Shown here piece by piece: positions 8,897-63,510 of a stretch of 64,000 nucleotides of DNA. Made by a program: the position numbers and the translations under genes. This stretch comes from Octopus sinensis (taxonomy: Eukaryota). The notes under the pieces are model-generated. The model was not told where the DNA came from, ran no database searches, and saw nothing but the letters and a program-made list of their open reading frames with translations. The stretch is taken from NCBI RefSeq assembly GCF_006345805.1, contig NC_043004.1:52514001-52578000 (forward strand). The letters are read 5' to 3'. The stretch's first letter is position 1. Every line of letters starts with the position of its first letter.

Positions 8897-9871
8897 AGAA
8901 TAGTATATATGGTAGGCAAATTCAATACGTAAAATATAGGCATTGGGTCAAGACTAAAAGTGTGAAGATTTGGCAATAACATAGGCAATAACTCAAGGAA
9001 TGTTTACTGTGAATTTGTTTTTAAATATAGATTTTACTGTAATATATATCTAATTTTTGTACTATTCTGTTTATTGTACTAATTACCAACTTCTATTTTT
9101 ATAACCTCTTCAAATTTGTAATAATTAATTAATAATTAAAAGAATCAATTGTTTTAAAGTGCAAAAAATATTTTGATTGAGTTATTTTTAATTGTTAATA
9201 GAAGTAATATATACTAGCAAATAGAAGTATTATAACTTGTAATAAAGTTTTTAGTTTTAATAAAAGCTAATATTTTCTAAATCTAAATATTTTATTTGAA
9301 ATTTTATCCTTAGCTGCAGTATTTGAAGTAAAGTTTTTCTTGTTTTCTACCTTACCAGATGTAATAAGTTGTCGTGAACTTTCACAAGAGTTATAACTTC
9401 TTCTATTTTCCAGATTTATAATCTTAAGAATACTATTTCCCTTGCTCGCAATTTCCATGAAATATATATTTCTTGCATGGATATTTAAAAAATGTATTAA
9501 CCGTTCGAATGCCCTTCATAGTCTTATTTGGGTGCCTATGAGGTACTGCCCATTGCGTTGACTGACTTCTTGTTTCATAATCATGTCATTAAATAAGTGA
9601 TCTGTTGTGAAACTCCACAGAGAGGTTTAGTTACCTTACTGAAACCTATTTCGCTTCCTTCATACATCATCAGACGTGCCACAAGATTTCCATGCGATAC
9701 GATAAGTCATCATTTCTTTTCACATTCTCATGTCATACCAGTACATATTCCATTGACGACTGCTCTTTATGTGAATTGCTGGTAGTAAATATTACATTGC
9801 TCACTCTGAAAAAATCGGATGCAATATCTAAAAAAAATATCGGGAAATTTTTCTATAATTCTTAACATAGT

Positions 9872-10188
9872 TCTCTTTTACTCTTTGACTCTTTTACTTG
9901 TTTCAGTCATTTGACTGCGGCCATGCTGGAGCACCGCCTTTAGTCGAGCAAATCGACCCCGGGACTTATTCTTTGTAAGCCCAGTACTTATTCTATCGGT
10001 CGATTTTGCCGAACCGCTAAGTAACGGGTACGTAGACACACCAGCAATGCTGGGGGGGAGGGACCAACACAGACACACAAACACATACATATATATATAT
10101 ATATATAAGACAGGCTTCTTTCAGTTTCCGTCTACCAAATCCACTCACAAGGCATTGGTCGGCCCGGGGCTATAGCAGAACAGTGTGG
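9872..10188 (-). mobile_element. Body of tRNA-derived SINE (family A) interrupted by the gag-element array; B-box segment deleted
   Basis: Matches the intact copy at 17797-18236 (gccttgtgagtggatttggtagacggaaactgaaagaagc...gcggtgctccagcatggccgcagtcaaatgactgaaacaag). Its head lies at 15808-15831. Confidence 0.9.
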
Positions 10189-10206
10189 CTGGCTAGCAAG
10201 CTACTT

Positions 10207-12195
10207 TATTTCATATGATTTGCCACTAAGGCAGTACAAAGAGTAGCTGCGGCCTGGACAAAAACATTAATGAATGATGGTGATGGACGAAGATGGGGTT
10301 GGGAGAAGACGAAAGCGCCCGCCGACTTTCGCTTCTCTAAGACATTGTCCTTTTTTTTCAAAGGTTTTACAAAGATTTCAAATTTTACAAATTTTACCAG
10401 AGGCAATAAACCTCTTTTTCAATATAATACAATGTTCAGTAAGTCTATGTTACCCGGCCGACCAGCGCTCTTGCCTCAACGAGGCAATCATCGCTGGTCA
10501 GTTCGTGGTCTAGAGGTATTATTTGAAATGAGTCCATCGGGAAGGAACCCGTGATCCTGCCCAGATTACCCCTCCTTATGACCTCCGCAGCCAGCTGCGA
10601 AGGCCACTCGGGGTCCTCCGTGCAGGACCGAAGTCCCTCCCATTTTACTCATTTTACTCATCTCACCTTCCACTGTTCCACCTTTAAAAAAGAGAACCAC
10701 AAATTGTGTCCCACAAATTGTTCCTCAGGCGGCACACCCGCCTGAGAAGACTTCGGGGACGCCGTCTGCGTATCACAATCCGCCGGCGGCGTCCCGTTTC
10801 TCCTCTTCCTTTTCTTCTTTTTATCTTGGGCCGCGGGAGGTTGAGGTTGAGGTGTTGCACACACCGGGTTCTCTTCTTCTCCCGCAGCTTCCGGGTCTTT
10901 TGGTGGGTCGCCATTGCTCGCCACTTTTCTCTTTCTCGTTGAGGAAGTCGTCGCTTCCCCGCTCTGTTTCTCTCCCTCCATCGGGGGGGGGGGGGGCAGG
11001 GAGAGGCTACGACATCAAATGCTCCAGGATCCTACTTTGGTCCCTGGGGCAGTTTTTCCTAATATGGTCGGTGTCCAGGCACAGGTGACACTTGTGGAAG
11101 GGCGTCCCTCAAGCATTACCGGACACCTGTACCCGGCCATCCTCAAGAAGTCCGGCAAAACCAGACCTTTGGCTGATTGGGTCCATAGGGTCAAAGTAGC
11201 TATTGACCCCTCCCAATCAGCCGCAGCCTGTACTCTTACGTTTAGGAGCTTGGCGCTATTACCACCCAGACCCCGGCGGATAGAGTCCTCTATACACTCG
11301 GGTCCAACGCCGGGTGGTAAGCCGCAGATCCAAGCTCTCAACAATTTTTGTCCCTTGTAATTAGGGAGGAACAATATCTCCTTGCCCTCAATGGGCTTGC
11401 TTGCAAAGTCGCAAGCTGCTTTAGGGGAGTCAAACAGCAACCAAACCGTTGCGTATTTGACTCCCGGTGCGATGTATTTAACGGCTGGCATATAGTCTGC
11501 CAGCTCGTTAACAATAGTGGCCTTTGGAAAGACAGCTATGGTGTTGAGCAACTTTGAATAAGTCCTCAACACCACGGTCCTCTAGCTCTTTCAGATATCT
11601 TTTGGGAGGTGTCAACTCCCATATGGTGAACTCCTTTGCCATAACAAAAGTTCAAAAAACAGTTCAAAGTGATAAAATAAAATAGACAAAAAAAGGAGAA
11701 TAAAAACAGAACAGAAGGGAAGAAACAAAATTCGAAACAGCAGTTCAAAAAAGTCTTTTTAAAATAAAAGATAGCAGAAGAGAGTTCAAAATCGAGGCAA
11801 AGGAATTAATTTTTTTCTTTCTTTTTTCCCGGCCAAAAGGTATTCCAGGCCACTGGTGAAAATAATCCCTGGTACTCCGTTGATAAATCCGAAGACAAAG
11901 GCAATTACACACGTTAATTTTTTAGGTGGGGCTACGCCTTCTCAAAAACACAATTCTCACTACAAAGTGTGTCTTTATACTCGACCACAGGCAGGAAAAA
12001 AATGTCTGGAGCAAAGTGGAGTTTATTACTTGCTAAAAAATATTAAATGCTAAAAAACATTAAATGCAAGCAATAAACTTCACTAAGCTCCTAAAAATAC
12101 AAAACGCCTACCTGTAGTCGAGTCAAAAGTTCAACAATTCACGTTGAAACACGTGACAACTGGAGCATCAAAACAACACGTCTGAACACGTCAGA
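10207..12195 (-). mobile_element. ORF1-only non-LTR retroelement, copy 1 (~2.0 kb)
   Basis: Bounded by target repeats at 10189-10206 and 12196-12211. 5'UTR (~550 nt) and 3'UTR align with element 3. Ends in hairpin + AATAAA. Confidence 0.75.
10445..11642 (-). pseudogene. Frameshifted ORF1/gag-like gene of element 1 (close relative of the element 3 ORF)
   Basis: ATG at 11642 gives MAKEFTIWELTPPKRYL (element 3: MAKARNFTVWELAPPKKYL). Frameshift into track ORF 11015-11575. Knuckle CHLCLDTDHIRKNC is in another frame. C-terminus WPSQLAAEV...ELTSDDCLVEARALVGRVT* matches WPPRVAAER...DLSSQSCLQAARQFASGT*. Confidence 0.8.
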
Positions 12196-12211
12196 GGTTA
12201 GCGAGCTACTT

Positions 12212-13656
12212 TATTCTATCAGATTTGCCATAAAGGCAGTACACAGATGGGACACTACAACACATGTGGGGACAGATAACAATTAAAAAATAAAATATGA
12301 TATAATGGATGAACATGAAAATGCACATGAAGAACAAATTAAAATATGATAATATGAATGATATCTGAAAATGATATTATGAAGAGTGTGCTACTCACCC
12401 CACACTGAGTAACACAACTCCCTGTCTCTAGGTCCTGAGTCCTTTTTCTCTTTTCGTTCAATCCTGTCACTTGATGGTAACCTTCTCTCCGTCATGCATT
12501 CATAACCTTTTTCGCCGGGAGGGGGGGTCTTCTAAATTTTGTGGTGTCTGTTCTTTTTTTTTCTTTTTTTCTTGAGGGGAAATGGGGTGGGTGGGTTCGT
12601 GTCTGTATGGGGAGGGTGGGTCTGAGTGGTCTTGGGTGGGATGGGGTTGGACTGGGGTGCCACATCATACTCAGTGTCTTTTCTTTTTTTTCTCTTTCTT
12701 CTTGTGCGCTCTGCAACTTTCCATTCCTCCTTTTCATCGCTTCCTTCGTCTATTTTTTCTTTTTCCTCTTTTTTCTCTTCTGTCTCCGCAACCACATCCT
12801 CGGCCGTAGTCTTTCGTAGAGGGCAGTATGCTCTAATGTGGCCCTTTTGGCCACATTTAAAGCAACGTGGTACTCTGCCCTCTACCCACACCCTCAGAAC
12901 GATTTTCCCCAGCGTCACAGTTTCTGCCAAGTTCTCAAGTTGTTCCTCCTCTGTCTGAATGATTAATTCGAGCGTCCTTCCTTTGCACACTCCTTCTGTT
13001 TCTGTGGCTTGGAGGACAGCCACCTTCTCCTCGCTTCCAACAAGGACAGCTGCTGCTATCCAAGCCCCTTCTACGTCCGGCGGAATTGCTTCTACCCTCA
13101 CTTTGGAAGTTTTTCTTCCAAGGTATTTGGGCAGAAGCACTACCTCCTCCGTTTTCACCACCACACTTGCCAGCCTCATTGCCTCTTCAGCTGTCCTAAA
13201 TTGGACAATCATTGTTCCGTATCTTTTTCCTTTTGTGATGTATGTGATTTCTTTTGACCTCTCTCTTAGCGCTCTTTTTGTATCTGCTTCCACCGGTTCA
13301 GCCCTTTTTCCTTTTAAAGGGAACACCTTATAGGTGATAGTCTTTCTTTCTATCTTCTCCATGATTCCTTTGGGGGGCGACAGTCTTACGTCCCCTTCCA
13401 CCTTCTGTAGCATCTTGCCATAGTTTTTCAAACCAGCCAAGTCCAGCTCCTTTCGTCTCTTCTCCGTGATCTCTGCAAAACTCTTGTTCTTTTCAAGCAT
13501 ACTGTCCATTGCTATGACCGCCCTCACGAGCTCCACCTCTGAAGACAACTCAGACCCGGTAAGGTCTGAGTACATTGTCTCACCGCAGCAACAACACCGA
13601 CGTCCGACTCGCACACAAACGACAAACCAAATGCACTATGGGTAACCGGAAGCAAG
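12212..13656 (-). mobile_element. ORF1-only non-LTR retroelement, copy 2 (~1.45 kb, divergent family)
   Basis: Flanked by identical AAGTAGCTCGCTAACC copies (12196-12211 and 13659-13674). ~80-nt 5'UTR, single ORF, 3' hairpin + AATAAA. Confidence 0.75.
12532..13575 (-). CDS. 347-aa ORF1/gag-like protein (RRM-like + CCHC knuckle) of element 2
   Basis: First ATG at 13575 within the 360-aa track ORF. Contains VWVEGRVPRCFKCGQKGHIRAYCP. Aligns with the element 3 protein (LSPPKG~LAPPKK, FRTAEEA~FDSAEEA, LLPKYLG~FLPSYRG, IPP~LPP). Confidence 0.78.
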   Translation of the reverse strand: MYSDLTGSELSSEVELVRAVIAMDSMLEKNKSFAEITEKRRKELDLAGLKNYGKMLQKVEGDVRLSPPKGIMEKIERKTITYKVFPLKGKRAEPVEADTKRALRERSKEITYITKGKRYGTMIVQFRTAEEAMRLASVVVKTEEVVLLPKYLGRKTSKVRVEAIPPDVEGAWIAAAVLVGSEEKVAVLQATETEGVCKGRTLELIIQTEEEQLENLAETVTLGKIVLRVWVEGRVPRCFKCGQKGHIRAYCPLRKTTAEDVVAETEEKKEEKEKIDEGSDEKEEWKVAERTRRKRKKRKDTEYDVAPQSNPIPPKTTQTHPPHTDTNPPTPFPLKKKRKKKNRHHKI

Positions 13657-13674
13657 CTGGTTAGCGAGCTACTT

Positions 13675-15790
13675 TATTTCAATTATTTGCCACTTAGGGC
13701 ATCACACAGAGGTAGAAGTAGCTCCGGGCTGGACAGAGACATTAATGGATTATGGTAATGATGGATGAAAATGGTGATGGGAGAAGTCAGAAGCGCCCGT
13801 CGACCTCTGCTTCTCTAATACAATGTTCTTTTTACAATGTTTTTAAATTTTACAAAATTCAAAATTCAAAAATTTCAGAAAATAACAGTGTTCAATGAAT
13901 ACATTTAGTAAAATGTTCAAAAATGTTCAAAATGTTCAAATTACACTTTTTCAGACGAGGTGATAAACCTCCTCTTCAACATGTTTAAAAATGTTCAAAA
14001 TGTTCAAAAAGTGTTCAACAATTCTCCCCGTCAGGTCCCCGAAGCAAATTGTCTTGCCGCCTGCAGACAACTCTGCGACGACAAGTCGGGGCCTGCGAAG
14101 AGAAAGGTAAAGTACCTTCTTTCAAAGGTCTCTGCGACCCTTGATAAGATAGCCTCCGTTACCCTTTCCGCAGCTACCCGCGGAGGCCATAACGGATTTC
14201 TTGAGCCGACCGCGCCCTTGCGCTCTCGGTCGCTCAAGCCATTCAAGAAATCCTCCACCTCCTCTCCCTTGTGGTAGAGGAGGAGAAGCATCTCCTCTTC
14301 ACAGGAGTGGACCTCCAGTGGCTCACTTCCTACTGGCGGAGCCTTGTCCGCGGGTGGCACACATCCCACCCGCGGCTCCGTCGGCGACACAGAAACGTCA
14401 GACGTCCGACCTCTCCTTTTTCTCCTCCTTCTTTTGGGGGAGACTGCTAACCCAGGGGACTCCGTCACCAGACACGGGGGATTGCTATCCCCCTCCGCCC
14501 CCTGAGCGTTCTTTGGTGGGCAACCATTGTTGCTCGCCGGCCTCTTTCTTTTCGTGGAGGCAACCTCCTCCACGACTTCCACCGTCTCCCCCTCCAGTGA
14601 GGGGACGGCGGGCACCTTTTCCTTTTCATGTTCCGGGGCGGCACCACGGCCCCCGGGACACTTCTTCTTAATATGTCCAGGCTCCGAGCACCGGTGACAC
14701 TTGGGGGCGCGTCCCTCAAGCATCACCGGGTACCTGGACCCGGCCATCTTCAGGAAGTCCGGAAAAACCAGACTCTTGGCCGACTGGGTCCACAGAGTCA
14801 AAGTGGCCTTTGACCCTTCCCAGTTAGCCGCAGGCTGCATTTTAACGTTGAGGATCTTGGCGTCCCTGTCACCCAGCCCCCGGCGGATAGAGTCTTCTAT
14901 CCACTCGGGTTCAAAGCCGGGCGGCAGGCCACATACCCACAAACGTAACAGTTTTTCCCCCCTGTAACTGGGGAGAAACAGAATTTCATCGCCCTCAATG
15001 GGCTGGCTTGCACATTTGCAAGCTTCTTCGGCGGAGTCAAATAGCAACCAGACCGTTGCGTGCTTGACCCCCCGTTGTATATGTTTAACGGCTGGCATAT
15101 AATCTTCCAGCTCGTTCTCAATGGTATCTCTCGGAAAGACCATTATGGTGTCGAGTACCTTTGAAAATGTTCTCAGCACCACGGTTCTTTCCTCAAGATC
15201 ATGTAAATATTTTTTGGGAGGTGCTAACTCCCACACAGTAAAATTCCTTGCCTTCGCCATAACGTAAAATACAATAGTTCAATAATAACTAAATTTAGCC
15301 ACAGAAAGGAGAATAAAAATGTAACAGAAGGGAAGAAAAAATAAAAATGGCAGTTCAAAAAAGTTTTTAACAAATAAATGATAGAAGAGAAAGAGAGTTC
15401 AAATTAGGCAAAGGAATTCAGTTTTCTTTTTTTTCTCACTTCTTCGGCCAGAATGTAATCCGTGCCAAATGCATTGGTAAGACCCTTGGTAAACAATCCT
15501 TGGTAATCCCGTGGACACACAATGACGATTTCACAATAATCTCTTCAGTCGGACCAAGCCGCTTCAAAAATACAATTTCTTTCGCTCGACACAGGCAGAA
15601 AAATTACATTCGGAGAAAAGTGGAGCCTTATTACTTCCTAAAAAATATTAAATGTTAAAAAACATTCATGCAAGCAATAAAGCTTCACTAAACCCACAAA
15701 AACACAAATTTCCTACCTTTAGTCGAGACGACAGTTCAATATTTCACGTTGAAACAACGAGACATCGGAGCAGCAAAAAAACACGTCCGT
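13675..15790 (-). mobile_element. ORF1-only non-LTR retroelement, copy 3 (~2.1 kb)
   Basis: Bounded by target repeats at 13657-13674 and 15791-15807. ~530-nt 5'UTR, intact ORF, ~355-nt 3'UTR. Confidence 0.75.
14031..15260 (-). CDS. Intact 409-aa ORF1/gag-like protein (RRM-like region + CCHC zinc knuckle) of non-LTR element 3; L1/Tx1-type
   Basis: ATG-initiated long ORF with CHRCSEPGHIKKKC (Cx2Cx4Hx4C) preceded by VMLEGR, then a basic/proline-rich linker. Homologous by eye to the two neighbouring ORFs. Confidence 0.8.
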   Translation of the reverse strand: MAKARNFTVWELAPPKKYLHDLEERTVVLRTFSKVLDTIMVFPRDTIENELEDYMPAVKHIQRGVKHATVWLLFDSAEEACKCASQPIEGDEILFLPSYRGEKLLRLWVCGLPPGFEPEWIEDSIRRGLGDRDAKILNVKMQPAANWEGSKATLTLWTQSAKSLVFPDFLKMAGSRYPVMLEGRAPKCHRCSEPGHIKKKCPGGRGAAPEHEKEKVPAVPSLEGETVEVVEEVASTKRKRPASNNGCPPKNAQGAEGDSNPPCLVTESPGLAVSPKRRRRKRRGRTSDVSVSPTEPRVGCVPPADKAPPVGSEPLEVHSCEEEMLLLLYHKGEEVEDFLNGLSDRERKGAVGSRNPLWPPRVAAERVTEAILSRVAETFERRYFTFLFAGPDLSSQSCLQAARQFASGT

Positions 15791-15831
15791 CTGGTAAGAA
15801 GCTACTTACCACACAACCACTCCTGCGCCTA
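15791..15831 (-). mobile_element. 5' head (A box) of the split family A SINE plus target-site copy
   Basis: Minus strand reads aggcgcaggagtggttgtgtggtaagtagcttcttacca, nearly identical to the SINE heads at 17797 and 58030. Confidence 0.88.
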
Positions 15832-17431: not shown

Positions 17432-17671
17432 TAAGAAAATGAAGCATTCGTATACAAGGTATAAATAAATTTATGAAAATTCGTATATTTGCAGTACGCA
17501 CGTATACATGTACACACATATATATATGTATCCGTACATCCATATGTATATACAGAAACACACGCATATACTCTCACATATACATACATCAACACGTGCA
17601 CACATATCTACGCGTATGCGTATATATGCGCGAATACATTGATACGTATGCAAACTTACGCATACGTGTAT

Positions 17672-17779
17672 ATATCACGTTGAAAGCACCGGTTCTCGTC
17701 CGATCACCGAAGTTAAGCAACGTCAAGCCTAGTCAGTAGTTAGATGGGTGACCGCTTGGGAAACCTAGGTGCAGTAAGC
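17672..17779 (+). rRNA. 5S rRNA-derived copy (probable pseudogene or variant)
   Basis: atatcacgttgaaagcaccggttctcgtccgatcaccgaagttaagcaacgtc...gatgggtgaccgcttgggaaacctaggtgcagtaagc follows the metazoan 5S pattern. The first ~10 nt are absent or displaced and there is no oligo-T terminator. Confidence 0.9.
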
Positions 17780-17796
17780 GTAACACATTGTTTCAT

Positions 17797-58890: not shown

Positions 58891-60420
58891 GTGAGAATGT
58901 GAGAATGTGTGGAAAATGTGAGAATGTGGAGAATGTGAGAATGTGTGGAGAATGTGAGAATATGGAGAATGTGAGAATGTGTGGAAAATGTGAGAATGTG
59001 GAGAATGTGAGAATGTGTGGAGAATGTGAGAATGTGGAGAATGTGAGAATGTGTGGAAAATGTGAGAATGTGGAGAATGTGAGAATGTGTGGAGAATGTG
59101 AGAATGTGGAGAATGTGAGAATGTGTGGAAAATGTGAGAATGTGGAGAATGTGAGAATGTGTGGAGAATGTGAGAATGTGGAGAATGTGAGAATGTGTGG
59201 AAAATGTGAGAATGTGGAGAATGTGAGAATGTGTGGAGAATGTGAGAATGTGGAGAATGTGAGAATGTGTGGAGTATGTGAGAATGTGGAGAATGTGAAG
59301 ATGTGTGGAGAATGTGAGAATGTGGAGAATGTGAGAATGTGGAGAATGTGAGAATGTGTGGAGAATGTGAGAATGTGGAGAATGTAAGAATGTGGAGAAT
59401 GTGAGAATGTGTGGAGAATGTGAGAATGTGGAGAATGTGAGAATGTGTGGAGAATGTGAGAATGTGAGAATGTGGAGATGTGAGAATGTGTGGAGAATGT
59501 GGAATGTGGAGAATGTGAGAATGTGTGGAGAATGTGAGAATGTGGAGAATGTGAGAATGTGTGGAGAATGTGAGAATGTGGAGAATGTGAAAATGTGTGG
59601 AGAATGTGAGAATGTGGAGAATGTGAGAATGTGTGGAGAATGTGAGAATGTGAAGAATGTGAGAATGTGTAGAGAATGAGAGAATGTGGAGAATGTGAGA
59701 ATGTGTGGAGAAGGTGAGAATGTGGAGAATGTGAGAATGTGTGGATAATGTGAGAATGTGTGGAGAATGTGAGAATGTGTGGAGAATGCGAGAATGTGTG
59801 GACAATGTGAGAATGTGGAGAATGCGAGAATGTGGAGAATGTGAGAATGTGTGGAGAATGTGAGAATGTGGAGAATGTGAGAATGTGTGGAGAATATGAG
59901 AATGTGGAGAATGTGAGAATGTGTGGAGAATGTGAGAATGTGGAGAATGTAAGAATATGTGGAGAATGTGAGAATGTGGAGAATGTGAGAATGTGTGGAG
60001 AATGTGAGAATGTGGAGAATGTGAGAATGTGTGGAGAATGTGAGAATGTGGAGAATGTGAGAATGTGTGGAGAATGTGAGAATGTGGAGAATGTGAGAAT
60101 GTGTGGAGAATGTGAGAATGTGGAGAATGTAAGAATGTGTGGAGAATGTGTGAATGTGGAGAATGTGAGAATGTGTGGAGAATGTGAGAATGTGGAGAAT
60201 GTGAGAATGTGTGGAGAATGTGAGAATGTGGAGAATGTGAGAATGTGTGGAGAATGTGAGAATGTGGAGAATGTGAGAATGTGTGGAGAATGTGAGAATG
60301 TGGAGAATGTGAGAATGTGTGGAGAATGTGAGAATGTGGAGAATGTGAGAATGTGTGGAGAACGTGAGAATGTGGAGAATGTGAGAATGTGGAGAATGTG
60401 TGAATGTGTGGAGAATGTGT
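58891..60420 (+). repeat. ~1.5-kb minisatellite; 36-bp higher-order unit built from GAGAATGT subunits
   Basis: Unit GTGGAGAATGTGAGAATGTGGAGAATGTGAGAATGT repeated with few variants. Confidence 0.95.
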
Positions 60421-60529: not shown

Positions 60530-61362
60530 GAAGTACAAGAGAAGACATAAAAACCTGAGCATGGGCTAGGATGATTATCGCAAAGCATACGATATGATAC
60601 AGTAATCCTGGATTATAAGAAGAATGAAAAGTTATGGAGTAGCTGAGAATATGAGAAGCCCTATACGAAACAGCATGAAATGTTGGAGAACGGAATTGAC
60701 AGCAGGAGAGTAATTACTAGGAGAGGTGAAAATCAAGAGAGGAATATTCCAGGGAAACGGTGTGTCCCCACTGATATTCGTGCTTGGAACGATCCCCTTC
60801 AGTGAAACACTACAGAGAACAAAGTTGTGGTATGATATTGGAAGAGTTAAGGGAAAACTAAACCACTTGCTATTCATAGACGACCTGAAGATATTCGCAG
60901 AAAGTGAGGCAGAACTGGACACCCTAATCTAGTCTCTGCGGATTTTCCCCAATGATTTTAAGATGTATTTTGGACTTACAAAATGTGCTACTATGGGGAT
61001 GAAAAGAGGAAGGCTTGTCAGGAGAGAGGGCATATCGCTACCAAGTGTTGAAATGATGAAGGTCATTCAAACCCCAATTCAGCTATATATACCTGGGAAT
61101 ACTTGAGGCAGATAGAATCAAATACCAAGACATGAACGCCAGAAAAATAATTTCAGTAATAAACTCGCGCGCAACCGCAGTACTTGGTTATGGCGCTGGA
61201 ATCCTAAATGGATAGAAGAGGAGCTAAAGGAGATAGACATGAAGTCAAGAAAGCTCCTAACGATGCATGGTGCTCATCATACACATGCAGACATTAAATT
61301 CCTACACATGAAGACAGCAAATAGAGGAAGGGTACGTTTAAGTGTGGAGGACTGCGTGCGTA
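60530..61362 (+). mobile_element. R4/Dong-type RT fragment
   Basis: DYRKAYDMI, VKIKRGIFQGNGVSPLIF, LNHLLFIDDLKIFAESE, LSVEDCV. Confidence 0.82.
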
Positions 61363-63510
61363 TCTAAACCACTTGAGCCAGCAGCTTTGAATTCCGTCTG
61401 GTCCTGTCGCTTTCCAGTTTGGCAGTTTCGATATCTGTGCAATGACATCTTTCGTTGTTATGCGCACATGGGCGTGTCATGCTGCCTCCGGGTGATGGAG
61501 TTCGAATCTCACGGAATGAATCCACTCAGCTCTGTGGTTGTGCAAAACATCTTTCCCCTAGATGTTCTTCCAAAATTGGCTGGTTTCTTCTACTTCAGGA
61601 ATGTATCAACTTCTGTTTCCTCCTAAGCCCTTCAAACATCTGCATCTGTCTGTTTCAGAATAACCGGTTTTGCTGGAACTGCGATATACGGCTAGTGTAG
61701 CGCTGCACCTTTAATATTTTAACCCGCACACGTTGTTTTAGAGTTTTGATGATAGTTTTGAAACCTTTCTTTTCTACTTGGTACCTCGCGCCAAGATATG
61801 CCCAAGATATTGCGCCAAGATATTGCGTTGCAATTAGACAATTGCCTATAGAGCGGTATAGTATGGATGGTAGTGGATGGTAGAGGGAAAAACAACATTG
61901 TTAATGAAAGATCGGTCAAAGGGCAATGAAGCTGGCAATTACCGACCCATTGCTTGTCTTAACCTCCTCTGGAAAGTATTGACAGGTACTCTCACAGGGA
62001 AAATATATACGTTCTTTGCGGAAAACAATCTTCTGTCAGTAGAACAAAAGGGTTACCAAAAAGGATCCAAGGGCACCACGGACCACTTTGTGATAGACAA
62101 GGTTATAATGAAGAACTGTAAACGGTACCAAAAACTTCCTGCATGGCCTGGATAGACTTCAAAATGACTTACGACATGTTACTGTATTCGTGGATTTCGG
62201 AAAAACCCGACAGGTGTGGAATAGCTGAGAACGTGTGTGCACTGATTAAGAACAGCATACCTAGTTGGAAAACGCATCTTTCCTGTAACAACCAACACTT
62301 AGTCGAGGTAACAAATCAGTAGTCCTACGTAAAATCAACGTGCACTATGAGATGAGAAAGAACGGACCTCGCCTCAACCACCTTCTCTTCATGGATAATT
62401 TAAAACTGATTGCAAAATCAGAGCCTGAAATGAAGAGGCTGGTTGAGACTGTGCAAATGTGCAGCAAGGATACAGGGATGGAATTCAGTATCTCGAAATG
62501 TGCGGTGCTTACTTTGAAGCGAGGGAAAACAGTATATTGCAGGGGCATAGAATTGCCAAACAGAGAGAGAATGGTAGACTCGAATGATGATGCTGGGTAC
62601 AAGTCCCTTCGGATCCAGGAGTTGGACAATATCTTGCACAGAGTAATGAAAGACAAGGTCACCTCTGCATATTTCAAGAGCCTCAAACCTCTCTTGAAAT
62701 CGGAGCTCAACTCAAGGAACCTTGTGACTACTATCAACATATGGGCTGTTGCTGTAGTCCTCTACAGTGCACCCATCCTTAGATAGACACAAGTGGAAAT
62801 TGACCAACTCAATAGCACTACTCGAAAGTCAATGATAATGTAGTTGCCCTCCACGCTAAGGCAAATGTACACAGGCTCGCCATGAAGGGAGTTATGGGTG
62901 GACGTGAACGGGTCAGCGTACGGGATTGCATCATCATTGAAAGAAGAAACATGGCAGAAGGAGTTAACAAAAATGGACTTGAGTGTGCTCATGAATTCCG
63001 TACATGAACGGTCAACGAGAGACAAGAAACCTTACTCCGTATGGAATTACAGGGTTAGTTCCACCGAGAAATCAACAAATCAAAAGACCATGAAGCATCA
63101 TGGAGGTGGCTCAACAAGGGTGCCCTAAAAAAGAATACCGAAAGCCTAATCATCGCGTCACAGGAGCAGGCATTGAATACCAACTCAGTGAAAATATATA
63201 TATATATATACCACACAATTGCATCGAACCTCTGCAGAATGTGTGGGTAGAGGGTCGAAAGTGTGACTCACATTGTTAGTCCTTTTGAAGTCTTGCACAG
63301 AAAGAGTACAAATGTAGACACGACAAAGTAGCCCAAAACCTCCACTGGCTACTATGCCGTAAATATAGATATGAGGTTACGAGTGCTTGGTACCAACATA
63401 CACCGGAAAATGTAATGAACAAAAAATGCAAGGCAAAAATCCTCTGGGACTTTCATTTCCAGACAGACAAAGTGTTAGAGCACCGAAGGCTGGATATAGT
63501 AACCTTTAAG
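61363..63510 (+). mobile_element. R4/Dong-type element with inverted 5' segment (61363-~61790 on -) and RT-RLE part (~61790-63510 on +)
   Basis: Minus: LKQRVRVK...QFQQNRLF...KLPNWKATGPDGIQSCWLKWF. Plus: DIALQL..WMVEGKTTLLMKD..NYRPIACL, LNHLLFMDNLKL, KSELNSRNLVTTINIWAV, RHDKVAQNLHWLLCRKY, KILWDFHFQTD...HRRLDIV. Confidence 0.82.

What the first reader, a model, noticed from the sequence alone, without database searches (positions are those of the whole stretch)
10189..15831. Head-to-tail array of three gag/ORF1-only retroelements stacked inside one SINE (candidate site-specific 'half-Tx1' system)
Seen: three same-orientation units (2.0, 1.45 and 2.1 kb). Each has a 5'UTR, a single CCHC-knuckle ORF and a 240-355-nt 3'UTR ending in AATAAA. 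None has endonuclease or RT coding sequence, and there are no LTRs. Four copies of a ~17-bp motif separate them, and the SINE head and body flank the array. Established: Tx1-clade LINEs are often sequence-specific (Keno targets U2, Mutsu targets 5S, Dewa targets tRNA arrays). ORF1-only elements exist (HAL1 'half-L1'; gag-only HeT-A forms head-to-tail arrays). Inference: a non-autonomous ORF1-only family, mobilised in trans, that targets a SINE or tRNA-like site. I know of no description of this combination, but could not search.
Basis: partly seen in the sequence, partly recalled or inferred. Interest (0 to 1): 0.9.

Follow-up and report, generated by a model that had tools for sequence, protein, structure and literature searches.

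The report
ORF1-only LINE copies stacked in SINE
Three retrotransposon copies that encode only the RNA-binding ORF1 protein sit head to tail at one exact spot in an octopus SINE. They are the stripped-down relatives of a site-specific L1/Tx1-type LINE lineage; this is a real finding of moderate interest and not a new kind of element.

Summary
On the minus strand, 10189-15829 holds three same-orientation units of 1985, 1445 and 2116 nt. Four copies of a 17-18-nt motif (AAGTAGCTYGCTWACCAG) separate them. That motif is a piece of the tRNA-derived head of an abundant octopus SINE, and the SINE's head and body flank the array.

Each unit has one ORF with two RRM-like domains and a CCHC knuckle. None has endonuclease or RT sequence, LTRs or a poly(A) tail.

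The ORFs are homologous to ORF1 of full-length octopod LINEs with APE endonuclease, RT and zf-RVT. The closest solved structure to that ORF2 is human L1 ORF2p. Those full-length LINEs are themselves sequence-specific and form head-to-tail arrays that sandwich short duplications.

ORF1-only derivatives recur in this lineage. Units 1 and 3 are colinear over their whole length with dN/dS about 0.25, so they spread as ORF1-only elements. A homologous Octopus sinensis copy starts at the same SINE position.

Two things are not shown: the autonomous partner that targets the SINE, and Tx1-clade membership, which rests on association only. Each ingredient has precedent (HAL1; Tx1-Mar/SINEU tandem insertions), so I call this a new variant of a known kind.

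The parts
15808..15829 (-). 5' part of the host SINE's tRNA-derived head (GGCGCAGGAGTGGTTGTGTGGT), which contains the A-box-like segment.
   Evidence: Continuous with intact SINE copies at 17795-, 58030- and 39560-.
15791..15807 (-). Target-site copy 1 (J_R), AAGTAGCTT-CTTACCAG. It is part of the SINE head.
13675..15790 (-). Unit 3, an ORF1-only element of 2116 nt. The 5'UTR is about 530 nt. The ORF at 15260..14031 is intact at 409 aa. The 3'UTR is 354 nt and ends ...GTGGCAAATAATTGAAATA.
   Evidence: The ORF model shows two RRM-like domains plus CCHC. It is homologous to ORF1 of full-length LINEs at E 1e-20 to 1e-27.
14658..14699 (-). CCHC zinc knuckle of unit 3 (CHRCSEPGHIKKKC).
   Evidence: Pfam zf-CCHC 19.2 bits, just under the 20.8 cut-off. 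The motif is explicit in the sequence.
13657..13674 (-). Target-site copy 2 (J_32), AAGTAGCTCGCTAACCAG.
12212..13656 (-). Unit 2, an ORF1-only element of 1445 nt from a different ORF1 lineage. Its protein is 26% identical to that of unit 3. The ORF at 13614..12532 is intact. The 3'UTR is about 320 nt and ends ...ATGGCAAATCTGATAGAATA.
   Evidence: It is 35-40% identical to ORF1 of full-length LINEs B, C and D in L003 (E 1e-38 to 1e-44).
12823..12864 (-). CCHC zinc knuckle of unit 2 (CFKCGQKGHIRAYC).
12192..12211 (-). Target-site copy 3 (J_21), AAGTAGCTCGCTAACC plus TCTG. The 16-nt core is identical to copy 2.
10207..12191 (-). Unit 1, an ORF1-only element of 1985 nt. It is colinear with unit 3 from end to end. 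The ORF is broken by frameshifts near 11575 and 11095 and by stops near 11015, 10660 and 10650.
   Evidence: blastn gives 74% identity over 1175 nt and 76% over 225 nt. tblastn aligns unit 3 aa 4-405 along unit 1.
10189..10206 (-). Target-site copy 4 (J_L), AAGTAGCTTGCTAGCCAG. It is continuous with the rest of the SINE.
9880..10188 (-). Rest of the host SINE: body, internal microsatellite and tail. About 42 nt of the B-box region are missing next to the array.
   Evidence: Alignment by eye to three intact copies.
10207..10246 (-). Conserved 3' terminal module of unit 1: a small hairpin TGCC-N5-GGCA, then AAT...GAAATA. The same module lies at 12212-12251 in unit 2 and at 13675-13714 in unit 3.
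   Evidence: 52-nt repeat family D3. Alignment with the 3' ends of seven related LINE copies.

Best explanation
The array is three independent insertions of non-autonomous, ORF1-only derivatives of an octopod L1/Tx1-type LINE lineage. It can be thought of as a 'half-LINE'.

Each unit is transcribed as an RNA of about 1.5-2.1 kb. That RNA encodes only ORF1p, which has two RRM-like domains and a CCHC knuckle. The RNA ends in a conserved module of about 45 nt: a small hairpin, then AATAAA, then GAAATA, with no poly(A).

A related autonomous LINE supplies the APE endonuclease and RT in trans. The endonuclease nicks one defined site in the tRNA-derived head of an abundant octopus SINE, between the A-box-like and B-box-like segments, in one orientation. 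The RT recognises the shared 3' module and copies the RNA by target-primed reverse transcription. A second nick 17-18 nt away duplicates AAGTAGCTTGCTTACCAG.

The recognised sequence lies in or next to the duplicated stretch, so every insertion regenerates a usable target. Later insertions then stack head to tail.

The likely order is units 1 and 3 first and unit 2 last. Unit 2's two flanking motif copies are identical, and it went in between the other two.

What is shown: the anatomy, the ORF1 homology, the absence of EN and RT, reuse of the same site, and the behaviour of the relatives. What is inferred: trans-mobilisation, the nick positions, the role of the hairpin and the insertion order.
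For: 1. Anatomy and target.
- The four motif copies are a segment of the SINE head. The outer two run straight into the SINE head and body.
- Five unoccupied SINE copies in the window carry the intact site.

2. The ORFs are LINE ORF1.
- In O. sinensis (L003, L012), O. vulgaris (L013) and O. bimaculoides (L015), homologous ORFs lie directly upstream of an ORF2.
- That ORF2 has Exo_endo_phos (3.6e-15), RVT_1 (2.3e-31) and zf-RVT (2e-8).
- ORF2 matches human L1 ORF2p colinearly, at 1e-14 for EN and 9e-40 for RT, ahead of R2.

3. Fold.
- The AF2 model of unit 3 aa 1-221 has pLDDT 73.7.
- Its best Foldseek PDB hits are tandem-RRM proteins at E about 1e-4 and probability 1.0.
- CX2CX4HX4C follows.

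4. No EN or RT remnant lies in the units and there are no LTRs.

5. The ORF1-only state is heritable.
- Units 1 and 3 are colinear over 5'UTR, ORF and 3'UTR.
- dS is about 0.8 and dN/dS is 0.25. Against the O. sinensis copy, dN/dS is 0.21-0.26.

6. ORF1-only derivatives recur in the lineage.
- L003_A is flanked by a 16-nt TSD, GGATGTGATATAATGA. It shares the 3' end of the neighbouring full-length LINE and keeps the ORF2 start.
- L014 holds another ORF1-only copy.

7. Same site elsewhere. The O. sinensis homologue (P0001, L001) starts right after ...GTGTGGTAAGTAGCTTGCTTCC of a SINE head.

8. Relatives are sequence-specific and stack.
- The L012 copy lies in an (ATT)n microsatellite.
- L003, L013 and L015 hold head-to-tail arrays of full-length copies with a recurring junction motif.

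9. Unit 2 belongs to a different ORF1 lineage, yet it shares the last 50 nt or so and the target with units 1 and 3. This fits a target and a 3' module dictated by one partner enzyme.

10. Precedent. Tx1-Mar LINEs and SINEU share a target in Mariner-N4_AMi, and tandem insertions there sandwich a 16-nt TSD (PMC4494074).
Against: - No autonomous element with this exact 3' end and this SINE target was found. The tools could not search an octopus genome by DNA, and the one metagenome scan gave only chance bacterial hits.
- Site specificity rests on four events. Three share one locus, and the fourth (L001) has lost its 3' junction.
- The four motif copies differ at 1-4 positions. The inner two are identical to each other but not to the outer two. 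That also fits 3' flank carried in the RNA from a donor locus.
- The 3' hairpin is only 4 bp, with one compensatory change across subfamilies. This is weak support.
- Transcription, and activity in the present genome, are not shown.
Confidence: 0.75

Rival explanations
1. The units are dead relics. Full-length site-specific LINEs inserted here and each later lost ORF2 by local deletion, so there is no mobile ORF1-only family.
For: - Internal deletions clearly occur in this lineage. L003_A and the L014 copy keep the ORF2 start codon and then jump to the 3'UTR. L014 5965-7036 has EN fused to the ORF2 C-terminus.
- Unit 1 is decayed.
Against: - Units 1 and 3 share the same ORF1-only organisation end to end at 74% nucleotide identity with dN/dS 0.25. 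This points to an ORF1-only common ancestor that kept coding.
- Two of the three ORFs are intact.
- L003_A has its own 16-nt TSD as an ORF1-only unit.
- Three independent clean deletions in one array are unlikely.
Confidence: 0.08
2. The array was not built by three separate hits on this SINE. The inner motif copies are 3' flank carried in read-through RNAs. Alternatively, an array formed elsewhere and was copied here in one event by template switching or recombination between occupied SINEs.
For: - The two inner motif copies are identical (AAGTAGCTCGCTAACC) and differ from both outer copies.
- Arrays of relatives are common, so donor arrays exist.
Against: - The identical inner pair is exactly what a last insertion of unit 2 into a slightly mutated copy would produce.
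- The units belong to very different families.
- The outer copies are continuous with the local SINE.
- Sequential insertion sandwiching a TSD is the documented route for Tx1-Mar/SINEU (PMC4494074).
Confidence: 0.12
3. A tandem cluster of host, possibly domesticated, RRM-CCHC genes that happens to lie in a SINE.
For: - Two ORFs are intact and under purifying selection.
- RefSeq models a homologue as a gene in O. sinensis.
Against: - The units are bounded by target duplications inside a SINE.
- They share a LINE 3' end.
- One copy is decayed.
- The homologues are ORF1 of full-length LINEs.
- The two intact ORFs are only 26% identical.
Confidence: 0.03
4. Assembly artefact: mis-joined repeats.
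For: Repeat-rich region. No reads were available to check.
Against: - The units are too divergent to be collapsed or expanded copies.
- The junctions are clean and regular.
- The same architecture appears in three other assemblies (L003, L013, L015).
Confidence: 0.02

Closest known systems
HAL1 ('half-L1') of mammals
   Same: - A non-autonomous LINE derivative that encodes only ORF1p and depends on a full-length relative.
- It arose several times independently (PMC5753468). ORF1-only derivatives here also arose repeatedly, in at least two ORF1 lineages.
   Different: - HAL1 derives from mammalian L1. Its ORF1p is type I (coiled coil, RRM, CTD) with no CCHC, it has a poly(A) tail, and it has no sequence-specific target.
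- Here ORF1p is type II-like (RRMs plus CCHC), the 3' end is a defined non-poly(A) module, and insertion is site-specific.
Tx1-clade sequence-specific LINEs and their partners: Tx1L in Tx1D, Keno in U2, Kibi/Koshi in microsatellites, Tx1-Mar with SINEU in Mariner-N4_AMi
   Same: - APE-type LINEs of the L1 group.
- Each subfamily has a defined target, which is often another transposon or a microsatellite.
- TSDs are about 16 nt.
- Non-autonomous partners share the target.
- Tandem insertions sandwich a TSD (PMC4494074).
- L1-Tx1 families are annotated as recently active in O. vulgaris (PMC13282606).
   Different: - The non-autonomous partner here is protein-coding (ORF1-only), not a short SINE. 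SINEU also has poly(A).
- The target is the tRNA-derived head of a SINE.
- Clade membership of the octopod lineage was not tested by phylogeny.
HeT-A of Drosophila telomeres
   Same: A gag/ORF1-only non-LTR element that forms head-to-tail arrays and relies on RT supplied in trans.
   Different: - HeT-A belongs to the Jockey clade.
- It adds to chromosome ends without an endonuclease target or TSDs.
- It serves telomere maintenance.
- The array here is internal, bounded by TSDs and inside a SINE.
Internally deleted non-autonomous LINEs (Bov-A from Bov-B, Vingi derivatives)
   Same: 5' and 3' parts of a LINE are joined by an internal deletion and mobilised through the shared 3' end (PMC4494074, discussion).
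   Different: Those are mostly non-coding. Here a complete ORF1 is kept under purifying selection.

Membership tests
LINE ORF1p, type II-like (RRM(s) plus CCHC) | Homologous ORF lies immediately upstream of an APE+RT ORF2 in full-length elements. | tested here: met
   L003 B, C and D, L012, L013, L015 and L002. E-values against the window ORFs are 1e-12 to 1e-44.
LINE ORF1p, type II-like (RRM(s) plus CCHC) | RRM fold. | tested here: met
   - The AF2 model has pLDDT 73.7.
- Foldseek gives tandem-RRM proteins at E about 1e-4 and probability 1.0.
- TM-scores are low (0.27-0.38) because the relative domain orientation differs.
- No Pfam RRM hit.
LINE ORF1p, type II-like (RRM(s) plus CCHC) | CCHC zinc knuckle C-terminal to the RRMs. 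| tested here: met
   CX2CX4HX4C is present in all three units. Pfam zf-CCHC scores 19.2 and 19.7 bits, just below the 20.8 cut-off.
ORF1-only non-autonomous LINE (HAL1-like kind) | Encodes ORF1 but has no EN or RT. | tested here: met
   tblastn with EN, RT and the ORF2 C-terminus finds nothing in 10189-15831. The unit lengths of 1.45-2.1 kb leave no room.
ORF1-only non-autonomous LINE (HAL1-like kind) | Propagates as such: several copies with the same structure and their own TSDs. | tested here: inconclusive
   - Units 1 and 3 are colinear.
- L003_A has its own TSD.
- Only a handful of copies could be seen. No genome-wide count was possible.
ORF1-only non-autonomous LINE (HAL1-like kind) | Shares its 3' end with an autonomous partner. 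| tested here: inconclusive
   - The 3' module is homologous to that of full-length relatives.
- L003_A matches its neighbour B nearly exactly.
- The exact partner of the window units was not found.
HAL1 proper (mammalian L1 derivative) | Derived from mammalian L1, with type I ORF1p and a poly(A) tail. | tested here: not met
   Octopod host, CCHC-type ORF1, no poly(A).
Tx1 clade of non-LTR retrotransposons | RT groups with Tx1 in a phylogeny (RTclass1/Repbase). | not testable with these tools
   - No reference Tx1 sequences were at hand.
- The RT search returned no clade names.
- The units themselves carry no RT.
Tx1 clade of non-LTR retrotransposons | L1-group architecture: APE EN, RT and a C-terminal zinc-binding motif. 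| tested here: met
   Shown for the full-length relatives only.
Tx1 clade of non-LTR retrotransposons | Sequence-specific insertion. | tested here: met
   - SINE head site used four times.
- (ATT)n target in L012.
- Recurring junction motifs in L003 and L013.
- Small sample.
HeT-A-type telomeric gag-only arrays | Terminal (telomeric) location, no TSD, Jockey-clade gag. | tested here: not met
   The array is internal to a SINE with unique sequence on both sides, and it is bounded by TSDs.
LTR retrotransposon or retroviral gag | Long terminal repeats, PBS/PPT, pol. | tested here: not met
   No flanking direct repeats beyond the 17-18-nt motif plus the 3' end. No pol.

The most novel reading that the evidence does not exclude
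A dedicated SINE-head-targeting branch of the octopod L1/Tx1-type LINEs exists. Its main passengers are protein-coding ORF1-only elements from at least two deeply diverged ORF1 lineages (26% identity). These lineages independently acquired, or swapped, the same 45-50-nt 3' recognition module, perhaps by template switching inside arrays. Purifying selection on the ORF would mean that these parasites must bring their own ORF1p in cis while borrowing EN and RT. Each insertion splits the A-box and B-box of the host SINE, so one retroelement family systematically disables copies of another.
Probability: 0.35. Interest if true: 0.6.

Novelty: new variant of a known kind. Interest (0 to 1): 0.5.

Why it matters
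- It gives a natural case in which ORF1p and ORF2p functions are split between a site-specific LINE and its coding parasite. That makes the cis requirement for ORF1p testable outside mammals.
- It adds a SINE head to the list of targets used by L1/Tx1-type endonucleases. A defined 17-18-nt target and a short 3' RNA module are the ingredients people look for when studying or re-using site-specific retrotransposition.
- For octopus genomics, some 'uncharacterized proteins' and gene models in O. sinensis, O. vulgaris and O. bimaculoides are ORF1 of these elements.
- Stacked arrays of this kind will be mis-annotated by automatic repeat pipelines.

Tried and rejected
1. Looking for the autonomous partner or more copies.
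- Exact-protein look-ups of the window ORFs found nothing.
- O. bimaculoides UniRef homologues are not in the contig index.
- A metagenome scan for the 3' junction pattern gave eight bacterial chance hits.
- Look-ups of more distant ORF1 homologues gave other subfamilies with other targets.

2. Origin by splicing.
- A perfect 5' splice-site-like AAGGTAAGT sits just before the ORF2 ATG in full-length relatives.
- Two ORF1-only derivatives keep that motif and the ATG, so they were not made by splicing from that donor.
- I rejected splicing in favour of internal deletion.

3. ARAGORN finds no tRNA in the SINE heads and Rfam gives no tRNA hit. 'tRNA-derived' therefore rests on the A-box-like and B-box-like layout read from the sequence.

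4. A formal covariation count on the 3' hairpin was not run. MAFFT put unit 3 out of register. Only one compensatory pair is visible by eye.

5. The RT homologue search gave 1433 hits but no clade names, so it did not settle Tx1 membership.

6. A pol III read-through or 5' transduction origin for the SINE head in L001 was considered and rejected. The B box lies downstream of the insertion, and T-runs occur at the element's 5' end.

Full report
**Observation**

Read in that orientation, the layout is:
- SINE head, GGCGCAGGAGTGGTTGTGTGGT: 15829-15808.
- Motif copy 1, AAGTAGCTT-CTTACCAG: 15807-15791.
- Unit 3: 15790-13675, 2116 nt.
- Motif copy 2, AAGTAGCTCGCTAACCAG: 13674-13657.
- Unit 2: 13656-12212, 1445 nt.
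- Motif copy 3, AAGTAGCTCGCTAACC plus TCTG: 12211-12192.
- Unit 1: 12191-10207, 1985 nt.
- Motif copy 4, AAGTAGCTTGCTAGCCAG: 10206-10189.
- Rest of the SINE: down to about 9880.

The motif is not private to the array. It is the segment GGT-AAGTAGCTTGCTTACCA-ACC of the tRNA-like head of a SINE. Intact copies of that SINE lie at 17795-, 30615-, 31191-, 39555- and 58030- in the same window. With up to three mismatches the 16-nt core occurs 8 times against 0.36 expected.

No unit is flanked by long direct repeats. The only repeat shared by all three is a 52-nt family made of the motif plus the element's 3' end. All units end ...GGCAAAT-N4-5-RRAATA and abut AAGTAGCT directly. The 'AATAAA' therefore straddles the junction, and there is no poly(A) tail.

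The host SINE copy also lacks about 42 nt of its B-box region just beyond the array.

**What the ORFs are**

- Unit 3 has an intact 409-aa ORF (15260..14031).
- Unit 2 has an intact 360-aa ORF (13614..12532).
- Unit 1 carries the same ORF as unit 3, broken by frameshifts and stops.

Pfam sees only a borderline CCHC knuckle. Two further lines of evidence identify the protein:
- Fold. An AlphaFold model of unit 3 residues 1-221 (pLDDT 73.7) consists of two alpha/beta domains. Its best PDB matches are tandem-RRM proteins such as hnRNP A1 UP1, IMP3 RRM12 and Hrp1.
- Family. A full HMMER scan of 1.8 billion representatives found about 50 relatives. All the named ones come from octopods: Octopus bimaculoides, O. 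sinensis, O. vulgaris and Argonauta hians.

Genomic context was decisive. In O. sinensis (L003, L012), O. vulgaris (L013), O. bimaculoides (L015) and a Logan contig (L002), the homologous ORF lies directly upstream of a second ORF.
- That ORF has an APE-type endonuclease, a reverse transcriptase and a zf-RVT motif.
- It aligns colinearly with human L1 ORF2p, at EN 1e-14 and RT 9e-40, ahead of R2.

The window ORFs are therefore ORF1 of an L1/Tx1-type LINE lineage. tblastn with the EN, RT and C-terminal parts of these ORF2s finds nothing in 10189-15831, so the units really are ORF1-only.

**Is 'ORF1-only' a family trait or local decay?**

Units 1 and 3 are colinear from the first to the last base. 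blastn gives 74-76% identity at both ends. tblastn aligns unit 3 residues 4-405 along unit 1, and the middle region aligns at z about 8.5. Their common ancestor was already ORF1-only.

Between units 1 and 3 and the O. sinensis homologue, dN/dS is 0.21-0.26 at dS about 0.8-1.1. The ORF stayed under selection while the lineage diverged.

ORF1-only derivatives recur elsewhere in the lineage:
- L003_A is a relative of unit 2. It has its own 16-nt TSD (GGATGTGATATAATGA) and the same 3' end as the full-length LINE next to it. It still carries the ORF1/ORF2 junction and the ORF2 start codon.
- L014 holds another such copy.

This parallels HAL1, which also arose several times (PMC5753468).

**Site specificity**

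All three units lie in the same orientation as the SINE, at the same nucleotide.

A homologous element in O. sinensis (P0001, 60% identical to the unit 3 protein) begins immediately after ...GGCTGTGTGGTAAGTAGCTTGCTTCC of a SINE head at an unrelated locus. Its 3' part has been lost.

The relatives behave in the same way:
- One full-length copy sits in an (ATT)n microsatellite, with (ATT)n on both sides (L012).
- Other full-length copies form head-to-tail arrays with a recurring junction motif of about 17 nt (L003, L013, L015).

This is the behaviour described for Tx1-clade LINEs. It includes tandem insertions that sandwich a 16-nt TSD in the Tx1-Mar/SINEU system, which targets a Mariner element (PMC4494074). 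L1-Tx1 families are annotated as recently active in O. vulgaris (PMC13282606).

**The 3' module**

Unit 2's ORF1 is only 26% identical to unit 3's. It is closer to the ORF1 of the L003 LINEs, at 35-40%. Even so, unit 2 shares the last 50 nt or so, and the target, with units 1 and 3.

That module aligns with the 3' ends of seven related LINE copies. The shared layout is a 4-bp hairpin, then AATAAA, then a terminal GAAATA:
- The hairpin is TGCC-N5-GGCA in the window.
- It is GCCC-CTTGT-GGGT in L003 and L013.
- One pair changes from G-C to C-G between the two.

I infer that this module is what the partner RT recognises. The support is thin.

**Mechanism**

I infer target-primed reverse transcription in trans.
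- The first nick is at GGT|AAGTAGC on the bottom strand.
- Priming occurs on the A-rich RNA 3' end.
- A second nick 17-18 nt downstream gives the duplication.
- The duplicated stretch carries the target, so the site is regenerated and re-used.

The two inner motif copies are identical and differ from the outer ones. This fits unit 2, the shortest unit with an intact ORF, inserting last between units 3 and 1. It also fits 3' flank carried over in the RNA, and I cannot separate the two.

Insertion splits the A-box-like and B-box-like parts of the SINE head, so the host SINE copy is inactivated.

**What remains open**

- I did not find the autonomous partner with this 3' end and this target. The tools cannot search octopus genomes by DNA, and the protein-based look-ups reached only other subfamilies.
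- Tx1 membership was not tested by phylogeny.
- Genome-wide specificity rests on four events.
- No reads were available to verify the assembly. However, the divergence of the units and the same architecture in three other assemblies argue against an artefact.

**Verdict**

What appears new is the combination:
- a protein-coding, ORF1-only parasite of a sequence-specific LINE;
- drawn from two ORF1 lineages with one 3' module;
- aimed at the head of a SINE.

I rate it a new variant of a known kind, with interest 0.5.

Noticed in passing
window 17666-17780 (+): Full-length 5S rRNA match (Rfam RF00001, 81 bits, E 1e-15). It lies 14 nt upstream of a complete copy of the same tRNA-derived SINE (17795 to about 18180). 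It could be a 5S pseudogene, a 5S-headed composite SINE or a chance neighbour.
   Followed up: no
L003 10980 and 16258; L002 about 1846; L003 4027; L014 about 11352: A perfect 5' splice-site-like AAGGTAAGT lies 1-5 nt before the ORF2 start codon in related full-length LINEs. Two independent ORF1-only derivatives keep it together with the ATG. Its function is unknown; U1 binding, regulation of ORF2 translation and splicing are possibilities.
   Followed up: partly
L012 about 9780-15350 (O. sinensis CM016872.1): A full-length relative (ORF1, EN, RT) is inserted in an (ATT)n microsatellite, with (ATT)n on both sides. This subfamily targets a microsatellite, like Kibi and Koshi.
   Followed up: partly
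L003 4300-20850; L013 4400-19200; L015 10000-20300: Head-to-tail arrays of three or more full-length LINEs of this lineage occur in O. sinensis, O. vulgaris and O. bimaculoides. Short recurring junction motifs separate the copies, for example ACTGAATACTCGTCAT in L003.
   Followed up: partly
L014 5965-7036 and 9260-11900 (O. vulgaris OX597819.1): An EN domain is fused directly to the ORF2 C-terminus with the RT deleted. Nearby, an ORF1-only copy is enclosed in an inverted duplication of about 600 nt that includes its own 3'UTR and flank.
   Followed up: no
window about 10176-10188: The host SINE copy lacks about 42 nt (the B-box/T-arm region, TTCCGGGTTCAGTCCCACTGCG...) immediately 3' of the array, compared with the other copies in the window. 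This could be a target-site deletion at insertion, a later deletion or a SINE subfamily difference.
   Followed up: no
window 58893-60419: A 36-nt minisatellite with 42 copies and 94% matches (consensus GAGAATGTGAGAATGTGTGGAGAATGTGAGAATGTG). It produces long spurious ORFs on both strands.
   Followed up: no
window 60573-62786 (+): Decayed reverse transcriptase of an unrelated LINE (Pfam RVT_1, 4e-5). It is only distantly similar to the RT of the lineage discussed here.
   Followed up: no
P0001, P0006, P0008, P0013, P0017, P0021 (RefSeq/GenBank gene models): Several 'uncharacterized protein' or misnamed gene models in O. sinensis, O. vulgaris and O. bimaculoides are ORF1 of these LINEs. One example is 'EPM2A-interacting 1-like'.
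   Followed up: partly
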